Below, one piece after another: positions 3,194 through 6,476 of a stretch of DNA of 64,000 bases. The stretch is taken from NCBI RefSeq assembly GCF_000143415.4, contig NW_003314279.1, positions 1,478,457 through 1,542,456 on the forward strand, given 5' to 3'. Under the pieces are notes generated by a model. That model was not told the DNA's origin. It saw nothing but the letters and a program-made list of their open reading frames with translations, and made no database searches. The stretch is from Selaginella moellendorffii (Eukaryota > Plantae > Lycopodiophyta). Position numbers and translations under genes: made by a program. Every line of letters starts with the position of its first letter. Position 1 is the stretch's first letter.

Positions 3194-4080
3194 ATGGCGA
3201 TGGCGATTATCATCCAGCTGCTCGGCATTACATCCGCGCTGGCGATCGTTGCCGTGTGCCAGTTCCCAATCCCCCGCCGGTACGATGGATTCGCTTTCGG
3301 CAGCTATGGCGGCGTCCAGGAGCCGATTCTGGTGGAGGCCTTCTTCGATCCGCTGTGCCCCGATAGCAAGGATTCGTGGCCGGCGATCAAGCAGGTTGCG
3401 GAGGAGTATGGCTCGGAAGTGAAATTTATTGTCCATCCCTTTGCGCTTCCGTAAGTAACACTCTTGGTCTCTTGGACGGCAGAGAGATTCTCGTTTGTCT
3501 TGTTTCCAAGCATAGGTACCACCACCAGTCGTTCCTTTCGGTGAGAGCGCTCCACATTGCGAATCATCTCAACGCGTCTCTCACGTACCCTTTGTTGGAC
3601 TTGATCTTCGAGCACCAGGTTGGTTCTCTTATATTTATTTATTTTGTTCTTGTTCTTGATCTCTTTCGAATGTTTCGATGGTGACGAATTGATTAGGAAG
3701 AGTTTTCCAACGCGAACACTGGTGACAAAACAGCGTCGACGGTGATCGACGAGTTTTCCAGCCTGTTCGCGTCGCAGTTTGGCAGTGGCAACGAGGCGAA
3801 GAGCATTTTCAAGCAGGGATTCTATGACTCCTCCACTGATCAGGCGGGGCGCATCTCTTTCAAGGTAGACAAGAAGCTTTGATTGTCATGGCAAGAAAAC
3901 TAAAGTCTTCGCGTACCTTTCACGCAGTATGGATGCTCGAGAGGCGTGACAGGCACACCGGTGTTTTTCGTCAATGGTGTTCCTCTCAGCAATGTAGATG
4001 CGAGCTGGGGAATCGACGAGTGGGCCAACATTCTCGATCCGCTGCTAGCAACTGGGCCTGGAATGAACGCATTTGGATGA
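3194..4080 (+). CDS. Secreted thioredoxin/DsbA-fold protein (CPDS motif), 4 exons
   Basis: Signal peptide, then VEAFFDPLCPDS, FIVHPFALP|YHHQSF and YGCSRGVTGTPVFFVNG. GT-AG introns; stop TGA at 4078-4080. Confidence 0.9.
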
Positions 4081-4111
4081 ACTAGCACGGTAAGATGTAT
4101 TGAAGACTACC

Positions 4112-5115
4112 TTAGAAGATTGGCATATGGACTTCTCTATACTTTCCATTGGTCGAGCATATGGTTCCAGCCTTCTCAAGCTCGTATAGAAGATCCACAA
4201 GCTGCTTTTGATCGCAATCCGAGAAGAAGGCAGCAATCTCCAGAAGCGATGCCTGTAAAAAACGCTTGCTTATAGCCACGAATGTAAATCATTCTCGTTA
4301 CCCCGTCTCTATCTCGAAGAAGATCCATGAGGCCTTGATCCAGTAACACCACCTTGCCTTGCGAAACTCTGAAGAACTCTTTCTTGATCTTCCGCGACTT
4401 TTGGAGCTCGGCCGACACAGCACGGAGTGTTTCGAGCTCGTTGGCGGAGTAGCCAGTCTCCGCAGCTGCCACCGCTCTTATATCGTCAAACGAGAAGCCG
4501 CGATCGAGCATAGTACTGCATAGCTGGAGCTGTTCTCTCGTCACCTGGAGAGAAAAAACTTGTGAGCGGCGGCACATCAAGAGCAAGAGATCTACCTTGG
4601 AGCAGGAACTTGAGATCTTATCGAGATAGACGCCTGTTCTAATCTGGCGAGTCCTTGGCAAATACTTGGACACCTCGTTTGCGGCACTGAGATTGAGATT
4701 GACTTCTTTGCACAGCGCTATCCAGTCTACTGGCTTTCCACCATCAATCGCTGCCACAAGGTGGTCCACGACAATCCCTCTGGGAGACTTGATTTTCTCC
4801 TGCGAGAAGGAAAACGAACAGCAGTCCTTTCTTGCCACGCAAAAATCTCTACTCACAGCGATAGCATCCAGCGAGAGGCCACCGAATTGCCAGAATTTCC
4901 AGACTTCCTCTGAGCTAACGGTGATCGCCTGTTAGCCGCATTATCAAATCCCTTCAAGAAATCCTTCCTACACCCACCTGTTGAGAGCTTCTTCGTGCCA
5001 AAGCGACGTTTACACTGCGAGCGCAAGCGCTGCCAATGCTTACTCCAGAGAATCTCCCCGCGCCGGACGGCCATGCCATTCTCCTGGCAATCATCGTCAC
5101 GGCAGCTCGGATCAT
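4112..5115 (-). CDS. 265-aa protein: organelle-type presequence + HTH_40 (RecQ/WRN C-terminal) + C-terminal winged helix
   Basis: Exons 5115-4978, 4928-4857, 4799-4596, 4544-4302 and 4252-4112, all phase-0 GT-AG. Reads VWKFWQFGGLSLDAIAEK...VVDHLVAAIDGGKPVDWIALCKEV and ends DGASLLEIAAFF...LVDLLYELEKAGTICSTNGKYREV. Confidence 0.75.
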
Positions 5116-5377
5116 CCCCCACCCCAAAACCCTAGCTCATGGTTTTTCAAATATCAATCTTCTAGATCGACGGCGGAATGTTCACTGGAATCGACGGCTG
5201 AGATCGCTCCCTGGTAAACCTAACAGAATTTTCTGCTGGCATTCCTTCTTGCTATGGCGGCGGGCGGCGGGCCTCGGGCCGCGAGGGCGAGAGAGCAGCT
5301 GTAGAACAATTTAGGGCAGGGAGGTCCCATGAGAGGGCGCCGCGAGAATGCGTGAAACATGGTTCTAGGGCTGAAGA

Positions 5378-6476
5378 ATGCCGCCGAAGAAGAAAGGGAA
5401 GAAAGGCAAGAAGGGAAAGAAGAAGAAGAAGGAGCCCAAGCACGACGCTGGCTGGCAAAAGGTATGGAAGCGATCTCCTTCCCTGGTAGAATCTCAGCTT
5501 TTGTTGCTTCGCCCAGGCTTTGATCAATGGGAAATGGGAGAGGCCTTTGGAAGCTCTTCCTGACCCTTTCCTCTGGCCGAGCTTTGGCGAGATCCGAGAG
5601 AAAATCCTCTTGAGTAGCCATCTGGTAAGAGCGAAAGCATCGGTGCTTGATCGGTCCAATCCAACTTCATCCCGCAGATAAGCATTTTGTGGAGCGGATC
5701 TATTCACGACGATTTCATCCTAGAGCTTCTCAAAGTTCCTCGGCCAAACCTGGTGAGCATTCTCCTTGTGATCTTGTCTTATAGATTGTGCTCAAAGCTA
5801 AGAGAATCGTTTTTTCACCAGCCAGACTACGCTTGAACTGAGGGGCACCAAATACTTAACAAGATTTGTCATGTCCCCTCCATCAGTGTGCCCGGTGCTG
5901 GAAACTCTCGACCTCGCTTGTTGTCCCATCCTAGAGTACGTGCTCATCGAGGTAATGAATGTCTCCTATCATTCATAGCTTTGGATCGATCAAACTTTAA
6001 CTTTGAATCGATCAAACCTTCCGATCTCTTGGCAGTCGACGAGCCTGGAATCCGTGTCCTTCAAACGCTGCGTTTCTCTCAACAAAGCCCTCTTGAACGC
6101 CAAGAAGCTCAAGCAAATCGATCTCCACGAGACCGGTCAGCTGGACTGCTTGATGTTATGGAGTGATGCCATCGAAGAGCTTCACTTCTTCTGCAAGGAG
6201 ATGACCCAGCTCGAGCTCTGCTGTCCAAAGCTCACAAGAGTGCAAAGACCATCGATCAAGGTACTCGATGGACGTTTCTTGTTCTTCATCTCTTTTCTCT
6301 TTTGTTCTTCGTTTTTTCAGGTAATACCACCCTTGTATCCTGTTCATCCGTCAGTTCTAGACATAGTTCGGGTTGACAACGCTCCCAGAGCGAAGGAGTA
6401 CAGCCATCCTTTTGTGATAGAGGAGTACAAACCTTACGCGAGGAGCCCTTTCATACCTCAGGCGATTTTGCTGTGA
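5378..6476 (+). CDS. 257-aa protein with Lys-rich N-terminus and degenerate LRR-like repeats, 6 exons
   Basis: Exons 5378-5461, 5517-5624, 5678-5752, 5826-5951, 6036-6260 and 6321-6476, all in phase. Starts MPPKKKGKKGKKGKKKKKEPK; repeats LTTLELRG, CPVLETLDLACC, LESVSFKRC, LKQIDL and CPKLTRV. Confidence 0.8.

What the first reader, a model, noticed from the sequence alone, without database searches (positions are those of the whole stretch)
4112..5115. Helicase-less RecQ/WRN tail with an organelle-type presequence: candidate organellar DNA-binding protein
Seen: five in-phase exons, none obvious from the ORF track, encode 265 aa. Exon 1 is a 46-aa Arg/Ala/Ser-rich peptide with no acidic residue (MIRAAVTMIARRMAWPSGAGRF...ALARRSSQQ). 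Known: the rest follows the C-terminus of WRN-like plant RecQ helicases, namely an HTH_40 domain (W..W...GLS...IA, V...L..A...G..VDW..LC.EV) plus a terminal winged helix. There is no room for a helicase core because a divergent gene starts 262 bp upstream. Inference: a RecQ tail was duplicated and retargeted to mitochondria or plastids as a nucleoid, recombination or partner-recruiting factor.
Basis: partly seen in the sequence, partly recalled or inferred. Interest (0 to 1): 0.78.

Follow-up and report, generated by a model that had tools for sequence, protein, structure and literature searches.

The report
Free-standing RecQ/WRN helicase tail protein
This Selaginella gene makes a small protein that is the tail end of a WRN-type RecQ DNA helicase without the helicase; it is expressed and old in seed-free plants, but where it works in the cell and what it does are untested.

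Summary
A five-exon minus-strand gene (5115..4112, 265 aa, or 258 aa from the second Met) is real. All four short phase-0 introns appear as splices in transcript contigs from four studies. The near-identical NCBI model is Selaginella moellendorffii LOC112348991, probably the other haplotype.

The protein has four parts: a basic, acid-free, disordered N-terminal peptide, a Pfam HTH_40 domain (31.1 bits, cut-off 27), a linker helix, and an acidic winged helix.

The RecQ reading is strongly supported.
- A profile-profile comparison with plant RecQ tails gives 99.7% probability across both domains.
- The best solved-structure match for the HTH_40 part is the C-terminal domain of a bacterial RecQ (3IUO).
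- Introns 2-4 lie in the same alignment columns and phase as the last three introns of a full RecQ helicase gene.

The tailed plant helicases are WRN-like (RecQ6 subfamily). Helicase-less relatives occur in Diphasiastrum, Riccia and three sets of unidentified transcript assemblies. They form one clade, so the split is old and not specific to Selaginella.

Organelle targeting rests on composition only. DNA binding is doubtful because the mature protein is acidic. I favour an adaptor role like bacterial YpbB with RecS. This scan has not noted the gene before on other DNA.

The parts
4978..5115 (-). Exon 1 (46 aa): basic, acid-free, presequence-like peptide encoded by its own exon. An alternative and probably preferred start is the ATG at 5094 (Met8).
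   Evidence: The AF2 model has pLDDT below 50 over P0001 residues 1-38. Four of the six coding SNPs seen between alleles fall in this exon. NCBI's model starts at Met8.
4929..4977 (-). Intron 1 (49 nt, GT..AG, phase 0). It separates the lineage-specific exon 1 from the RecQ-derived exons.
   Evidence: Joint 4927/4977 in 4 of 4 runs.
4857..4928 (-). Exon 2 (24 aa): start of HTH_40 with the W..W...GLS...IA motif.
4800..4856 (-). Intron 2 (57 nt, phase 0). Its position is shared with a RecQ helicase gene.
   Evidence: Joint 4798/4856. It falls in the same alignment column (731) as introns in Diphasiastrum, Riccia and Kingdonia RecQ.
4596..4799 (-). Exon 3 (68 aa): core of HTH_40 with the VDW..LC.E motif.
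4545..4595 (-). Intron 3 (51 nt, phase 0). Its position is shared with a RecQ helicase gene.
   Evidence: Joint 4542/4594; column 827.
4302..4544 (-). Exon 4 (81 aa): end of HTH_40, the linker helix with the basic KSRKIKK patch, and the first strands and helix of the winged helix.
4253..4301 (-). Intron 4 (49 nt, phase 0). Its position is shared with a RecQ helicase gene.
   Evidence: Joint 4251/4301 in 3 runs; column 981.
4112..4252 (-). Exon 5 (46 aa plus TAA): the rest of the acidic C-terminal winged helix.
4470..4910 (-). HTH_40 domain (PF14493): window-model residues 53-163, equal to P0001 residues 46-156. It spans introns 2 and 3.
   Evidence: 31.1 bits against a cut-off of 27, E 2.9e-07. 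pLDDT is above 90. The fold matches 3IUO_B at Z 9.0 with 108 of 111 residues aligned.
4115..4370 (-). C-terminal winged helix: window-model residues 197-265. It spans intron 4.
   Evidence: pLDDT is about 90 or more. Z is about 8 to many winged helices. The lowest rmsd is to RPA32C: 1.2 A over 56 residues for 4mqv_C and 1dpu. Net charge is -4 and pI 4.7.
4058..4110 (-). Optional 53-nt 3'-UTR intron that begins 1 nt after the stop codon.
   Evidence: Joint 4056/4110 in 3 runs, alongside unspliced contigs covering 4030-4139.
5119..5377 (.). Short region shared with the divergent + strand neighbour (ATG at 5378). It leaves no room for helicase exons.
   Evidence: Zero contig depth at 5142-5302. 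A neighbour contig starts at 5303.

Best explanation
The gene encodes a free-standing copy of the C-terminal module of a WRN-type (RecQ6 subfamily) RecQ helicase: an HTH_40 domain, a linker helix and an acidic winged helix, with no helicase, zinc-binding, RQC or HRDC part. It arose when the last four exons of a RecQ6-type gene were copied or split off at the DNA level and gained a new first exon. This happened before liverworts and lycophytes diverged, if descent was vertical. These steps are shown. In Selaginella the new exon encodes a basic, acid-free, disordered peptide that looks like an organelle transit peptide. That part is inferred, and I put import into mitochondria or plastids at about 0.5. 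The most likely mechanism, also inferred, is an adaptor working in trans. The module would bind a partner helicase or nuclease and a single-strand-binding hub (RPA or organellar SSB type), as Bacillus YpbB bridges the tail-less RecQ paralogue RecS to SSB. I consider this more likely than a DNA-binding factor acting alone. The confidence given applies to the shown core only.
For: Gene and expression: splices in four studies; an allelic NCBI model.

Homology to RecQ tails:
- HTH_40 scores above the Pfam cut-off, and all 25 family rows match HTH_40.
- phmmer over 1.84 billion representatives finds RecQ proteins with HRDC and HTH_40.
- hhalign of the stand-alone group against RecQ tails gives 99.7% probability, E 3e-26, 196 columns, both domains in the same order.
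- The best solved-structure match for residues 37-149 is the RecQ C-terminal domain 3IUO.
- The best Atlas fold match is a plant RecQ cluster.

Descent: three of three tail introns share column and phase with a Kingdonia RecQ gene and with the Diphasiastrum and Riccia stand-alone genes.

WRN type: the tailed Kingdonia RecQ scores 174 bits to human WRN, against 114-121 to RECQ1 and 116 to BLM. A review places WRN in the RecQ6 subfamily (PMC6947026), and human WRN is annotated with HTH_40 (PMC7947261).

Age: the stand-alone clade has 100/100 support.

Presequence: no Asp or Glu for 45-52 residues in both lycophytes, disordered in the model, and carrying most of the allelic differences.

Adaptor reading: the winged helix is acidic in every member, at pI 4.2-6.1, and closest in rmsd to the protein-binding RPA32C. 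The YpbB/RecS/SSB precedent is in PMC3000357.
Against: - No targeting predictor or localisation data were available.
- The maximum helical hydrophobic moment of the N-terminus is low (0.29-0.34), so it is not a textbook mitochondrial presequence.
- The annotated Riccia relative starts with a very acidic N-terminus. However, an in-frame upstream ATG would add a 63-aa basic extension.
- A basic KSRKIKK patch in the linker could act as a nuclear signal.
- No seed-free RecQ6 tails were in the tree, so the branching order and date are not resolved.
- The winged-helix matches (Z about 8) are generic.
- I did not test whether YpbB carries the same domain.
- No partner has been identified.
Confidence: 0.85

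Rival explanations
1. The same stand-alone RecQ6/WRN tail protein works in the nucleus, for example as a trans-acting subunit or competitor of nuclear RecQ6, RecQsim or RPA complexes. On this reading the basic N-terminus is only a disordered extension and not an import signal.
For: The parent module belongs to nuclear helicases. The linker carries a basic patch that recurs as KK in relatives. The annotated Riccia start is acidic. The N-terminus has a low amphipathic moment.
Against: Acid-free runs of 45-52 residues in two lycophyte relatives are unlikely by chance. The peptide sits on its own phase-0 exon. Several relatives have basic N-terminal extensions or isoforms.
Confidence: 0.4
2. It is a sequence-specific transcription factor built from two helix-turn-helix modules, with no role in DNA repair or recombination.
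For: Many winged-helix repressors (MarR, MecI, IclR) score Z 7.4-8.2 to the C-terminal domain. There are weak MerR and MarR Pfam hits.
Against: The mature protein is acidic and the winged helix carries net charge -4. All significant relatives are RecQ tails. The Z values lie in the range the tool calls generic.
Confidence: 0.08
3. It is a transcribed but functionless remnant of a broken RecQ6 gene.
For: It consists only of the 3' exons of a RecQ-type gene. Few relatives were found: 13 hits at E <= 0.001, of which 4 are noise.
Against: The ORF is intact in both haplotypes. The same five-exon helicase-less gene occurs in Diphasiastrum and Riccia. The domains are modelled confidently from a 25-row alignment. 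Core residues are invariant: W52, V73, D88, W89, C93. The gene is spliced and expressed in four studies.
Confidence: 0.03

Closest known systems
C-terminal tail of plant RecQ6 (WRN-type) helicases, the subfamily that PMC6947026 says holds moss PpRECQ6 and a wheat homologue it calls RECQ7. I equated the tailed helicases found here (e.g. Kingdonia P0025, Dendrobium P0012) with that subfamily only by their WRN-best similarity.
   Same: The HTH_40 domain, linker and acidic winged helix come in the same order. Three intron positions are identical.
   Different: There is no DEAD/Helicase_C core, RecQ_Zn_bind, RQC or HRDC domain. A new first exon encodes a basic peptide. The group forms a separate, long-branched clade.
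Human WRN C-terminal region annotated as HTH_40 (PMC7947261)
   Same: The same Pfam domain sits after the HRDC domain. The tailed plant helicases are closest to WRN among the human RecQs.
   Different: My plant profile did not reach WRN's tail in the PDB sequence set. WRN also carries an exonuclease and a helicase.
Bacillus subtilis YpbB, partner of the RecQ paralogue RecS (PMC3000357)
   Same: It is a helicase-less protein resembling the last ~300 residues of extended RecQ proteins. It forms a stable complex with a tail-less RecQ and links it to SSB. It is the best functional analogy.
   Different: It is bacterial and encoded in an operon with its helicase. I did not test here whether it carries HTH_40, and no helicase gene lies beside the Selaginella gene.
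PDB 3IUO, C-terminal domain of Porphyromonas gingivalis RecQ
   Same: It is the best structural match to residues 37-149: Z 9.0, rmsd 3.7 A, 108 of 111 residues.
   Different: Identity is only 8%. It is a structural-genomics entry with no assigned function, and Z 9 is moderate for a helical domain.
RPA32 C-terminal winged helix (1DPU, 4MQV)
   Same: It has the lowest rmsd of the listed matches to the terminal domain (1.2 A over 56 residues, Z 7.9-8.0). In the listed entries it is bound to UNG2 and SMARCAL1 peptides, which shows a protein-binding role. Pfam RPA_C hits 3 of 25 family rows weakly.
   Different: The Selaginella protein has no significant Pfam RPA_C hit. Many unrelated winged helices score equally well.

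Membership tests
Pfam HTH_40 (PF14493) | Whole-protein score at or above the gathering cut-off of 27 bits | tested here: met
   31.1 bits, E 2.9e-07, profile positions 3-88 of 89. The domain is split by introns, so single exons score only 13 bits.
RecQ helicase family | DEAD/Helicase_C motor core with RecQ zinc-binding and RQC domains | tested here: not met
   P0001 has no such Pfam hits. No upstream exons are transcribed. The protein is therefore not a RecQ helicase.
RecQ6/WRN-type C-terminal module | Collinear HTH_40 plus terminal winged helix, homologous over the whole length | tested here: met
   hhalign gives 99.7%, E 3e-26, query columns 10-210 against 15-258.
RecQ6/WRN-type C-terminal module | Shared gene structure with the 3' exons of a RecQ gene | tested here: met
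   Three phase-0 introns fall in identical alignment columns (731, 827, 981) in Selaginella, Diphasiastrum, Riccia and Kingdonia RecQ.
RecQ6/WRN-type C-terminal module | The tailed plant helicases belong to the WRN/RecQ6 subfamily and not to RECQ2/MED34 | tested here: inconclusive
   P0025 scores 174 bits to WRN against 114-121 to RECQ1. No RecQ family tree was built. One source names P0012 'MED34'.
Organellar (mitochondrial or plastid) presequence | N-terminal 20-60 residues rich in Arg, Ser and Ala, free of acidic residues, and unstructured | tested here: met
   The first acidic residue is at 53 (46 from Met8). The 46-aa exon-1 peptide has 7 Arg, 9 Ala and 7 Ser, and pLDDT is below 50.
Organellar (mitochondrial or plastid) presequence | Positive call by a trained predictor, or observed import and cleavage | not testable with these tools
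   No TargetP-type tool or localisation data were available. The amphipathic moment is low.
RPA32C-type winged helix (PF08784) | Significant profile match | tested here: not met
   P0001:185-258 has no RPA_C hit even at E <= 10. Only the fold is similar.
YpbB-like helicase partner | Forms a stable complex with a tail-less RecQ paralogue and binds SSB | not tested
   This is an analogy from PMC3000357. No YpbB sequence was available to compare.

The most novel reading that the evidence does not exclude
Seed-free land plants keep an ancient split-off WRN/RecQ6 tail as a separate protein that is imported into organelles. There it would couple an organellar helicase (for example RECG1 or a RecQsim-type enzyme) to SSB-coated DNA, making it a eukaryotic counterpart of bacterial YpbB-RecS. 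It could bear on the unusually recombinogenic organelle genomes of lycophytes.
Probability: 0.2. Interest if true: 0.7.

Novelty: new variant of a known kind. Interest (0 to 1): 0.5.

Why it matters
The HTH_40 tail of WRN-type helicases has no assigned function. A natural, expressed, stand-alone version gives a simple handle for finding what the tail binds: it is small, soluble-sized and needs no helicase. The shared intron positions give an unusually clean record of how a domain module became a gene by adding a new first exon. If the protein enters organelles, it would add an unknown component to plant organelle genome maintenance. The RecQ6 subfamily promotes gene targeting in moss and gene conversion in wheat (PMC6947026), so partners of its tail may also have practical interest.

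Tried and rejected
- Single exons against Pfam gave only sub-threshold hits because introns split the domain.
- The word-index protein search found no relative of similar length with the single sequence. With the alignment it returned mostly RecQ fragments.
- The Atlas feature search gave nothing.
- The PDB sequence search found nothing meaningful with the single protein or with the profile.
- NCBIfam gave nothing.
- The single-sequence AF2 model was unusable at pLDDT 43. Foldseek against the PDB gave no hit at E <= 0.001.
- Four phmmer hits (P0004, P0006, P0008, P0011) are repeat or coiled-coil noise on the linker and were dropped.
- Gene records for P0012 and P0023 were not on file.
- SRR accession numbers of the unnamed transcriptome relatives appear in no paper, so their species are unknown.
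- Earlier scan notes gave nothing on a Selaginella RecQ with a tail.
- The relic reading was rejected because of the conserved orthologues.
- A signal peptide was rejected because arginines interrupt the hydrophobic run.

Full report
**Observation**

On the minus strand, five exons (5115-4978, 4928-4857, 4799-4596, 4544-4302, 4252-4112) splice into a 798-nt frame. It encodes 265 aa plus a stop codon. The four introns are 49, 57, 51 and 49 nt, all GT..AG and all phase 0.

Contigs from four public runs in four studies were laid on 3900-5500. They skip exactly these intervals, with CT..AC ends on the + strand. One 1106-nt contig carries all four joints.

No contig depth is seen at 5142-5302. The divergent neighbour starts at 5378, so there are no upstream helicase exons.

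Contigs end at about 5097-5118, and in run X2 an adapter follows 5118. The first ATG (5115) may therefore be too close to the 5' end to be used. NCBI's model of the allelic gene starts at the second Met (window 5094). Contigs cannot prove a transcript start, so this remains open.

**Identity of the gene**

A word search with exons 3-4 returned one protein, P0001. It is Selaginella moellendorffii LOC112348991, 'uncharacterized', 258 aa. It differs from the window's product at six residues.

Two runs (X1 and X5) hold both alleles of exon 1 as separate contigs. The window is therefore probably the other haplotype of the same gene. Four of the six coding differences that the contigs show lie in exon 1.

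**Anatomy of the protein**

- Pfam HTH_40 scores 31.1 bits against a cut-off of 27, over P0001 residues 46-156.
- An AlphaFold model built on a 25-row alignment has mean pLDDT 80. Residues 1-38 are disordered.
- Residues about 41-160 form a helical domain with pLDDT above 90.
- A long linker helix follows, carrying a KSRKIKK patch.
- Residues about 190-258 form a winged helix.
- The N-terminal peptide has no Asp or Glu before residue 53 (46 from Met8) and is rich in Arg, Ala and Ser.

**Relatives**

An exhaustive phmmer search of 1.84 billion representatives gave 13 hits at E <= 0.001. Four of them are repeat noise on the linker. The rest fall into three groups.

- *Helicase-less proteins.* These come from Diphasiastrum complanatum (a lycophyte), Riccia sorocarpa (a liverwort) and three sets of unnamed transcriptome assemblies.
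- *RecQ proteins.* These carry HRDC and HTH_40. The Dendrobium protein (P0012) also keeps the helicase core.
- *A Cornus florida protein.* It has seven tandem HTH_40 units.

An alignment shows the same order of modules in all of them. The shared motifs include W..W...GLS...IA, VDW..LC.E, and DGASL.EI...F.DCD...L..LL..LE...I.R..G.YR.

**Link to RecQ**

- Profile-profile comparison of the stand-alone group with RecQ tails gives 99.7% probability, E 3e-26, over 196 columns and both domains.
- An all-against-all structural search puts PDB 3IUO first. This is the C-terminal domain of Porphyromonas gingivalis RecQ, at Z 9.0 with 108 of 111 residues aligned to model residues 37-149.
- The Atlas fold search puts a streptophyte RecQ helicase cluster first.
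- The strongest evidence is gene structure. By exact spliced matching, the Diphasiastrum and Riccia genes also have five exons with phase-0 introns. Introns 2, 3 and 4 of all three stand-alone genes fall in the same alignment columns as the last three introns of the 13-exon Kingdonia RecQ gene.

The stand-alone gene is therefore the last four exons of a RecQ-type gene plus a new exon 1. This excludes convergence and retroposition.

**Which RecQ subfamily**

The tailed Kingdonia helicase scores 174 bits to human WRN. It scores 114-121 bits to RECQ1 and 116 bits to BLM.

A review places WRN with the plant RecQ6 subfamily. RecQ6 is absent from Arabidopsis, enhances gene targeting in moss and promotes gene conversion in wheat (PMC6947026). 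Another review's domain key lists HTH_40 among the domains drawn for the human RecQ helicases. I read this as WRN's C-terminal region, but the text I saw does not say which helicase carries it (PMC7947261).

The 'MED34' name on the Dendrobium protein looks like a transferred annotation. I did not build a RecQ family tree.

**Age of the split**

In a maximum-likelihood tree, the seven stand-alone rows form one group with 100/100 support. The Cornus repeats sit with the angiosperm RecQ tails, which indicates a separate and later derivation.

The split therefore predates the divergence of liverworts and lycophytes, if descent was vertical. It is not a Selaginella novelty. Two caveats apply: the tree contains no seed-free RecQ6 tails, and the root is only a midpoint.

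**Targeting**

The Selaginella and Diphasiastrum N-termini are unrelated in sequence. Both are acid-free for about 45 residues and rich in Arg, Ser and Thr. With an assumed background of about 12% Asp plus Glu, my own estimate is that such a run has a chance of well under 1%.

The peptide is a separate exon, is disordered in the model, and varies more between alleles than the rest of the protein. These are features of transit peptides.

Against this, the amphipathic moment is low and the annotated Riccia start is very acidic. However, an in-frame upstream ATG in Riccia would add a 63-aa basic extension. Other relatives show basic extensions or alternative N-terminal isoforms.

I could run no predictor and no experiment, so I put organelle import at about 0.5.

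**Mechanism**

The mature protein has pI 5.8. The winged helix is acidic in every member, stand-alone or helicase-attached (pI 4.2-6.1). The HTH_40 domain is near neutral in most. This argues against a protein whose main job is to coat or bind DNA.

Among the listed matches, the winged helix is closest in rmsd to RPA32C, at 1.2 A over 56 residues. The listed RPA32C entries are complexes with partner peptides. The Z values of about 8 are generic, and Pfam gives no RPA_C hit.

In Bacillus, YpbB resembles the last ~300 residues of extended RecQ proteins. It forms a stable complex with the tail-less paralogue RecS, and it is needed for binding SSB and for fork localisation (PMC3000357).

I therefore favour an adaptor that couples a helicase or nuclease to an RPA/SSB-type hub, acting in trans. 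This is inference. I did not test whether YpbB holds HTH_40.

**Novelty**

I found no paper that describes a helicase-less RecQ6/WRN tail protein in plants. Databases list it only as uncharacterized with HTH_40. It is a new variant of a known kind: a known domain and a known type of split in bacteria, but a new eukaryotic gene family with a clear origin.

**Verdict**

- The RecQ-tail reading is strongly supported and extended.
- The organelle and DNA-binding readings are open and weakened respectively.
- Interest is moderate.

Noticed in passing
window 4058-4110 (-) and 3926-4080 (+): Some transcripts remove a 53-nt intron that starts 1 nt after the stop codon. The 3' UTR overlaps the last coding exon of the convergent DsbA-like thioredoxin gene, and contigs run across both genes.
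   Followed up: partly
window 4998-5097: Runs X1 and X5 hold two alleles of exon 1 as separate contigs at comparable depth. They differ at 5028, 5034, 5047 and 5067, and the non-window allele matches NCBI's P0001. Allelic differences are concentrated in the presequence-like exon.
   Followed up: partly
window 5119-5377: The region shared with the divergent + strand gene is very short. That gene begins with a Lys-rich MPPKKKGKKGKK peptide at 5378 and its contig starts at 5303. No Pfam family was found for its first exons.
   Followed up: partly
P0002 (Cornus florida LOC132269237): This 1030-aa angiosperm protein consists of seven tandem HTH_40 units of about 135 aa each and has no helicase. In the tree its units group with the angiosperm RecQ tails, so it is a second, independent helicase-less derivative.
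   Followed up: partly
P0007/P0018/P0019/P0020 (loci L003-L007): This group of unnamed transcriptome relatives carries an extra C-terminal part with a CxC...CxH pattern that resembles a SWIM zinc finger (Pfam E 0.47 only). It also has two alternative N-termini, one of them basic and presequence-like.
   Followed up: partly
L009:2812-3000: In Riccia the reading frame is open upstream of the annotated ATG. An in-frame ATG 63 codons upstream would add a basic, Ser/Arg/Gly-rich extension, so the annotated start may be too far downstream.
   Followed up: no
L008:3001-33112: The Diphasiastrum orthologue has the same five exons spread over 30 kb, against 1 kb in Selaginella. This shows how compact Selaginella introns are (49-57 nt).
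   Followed up: no
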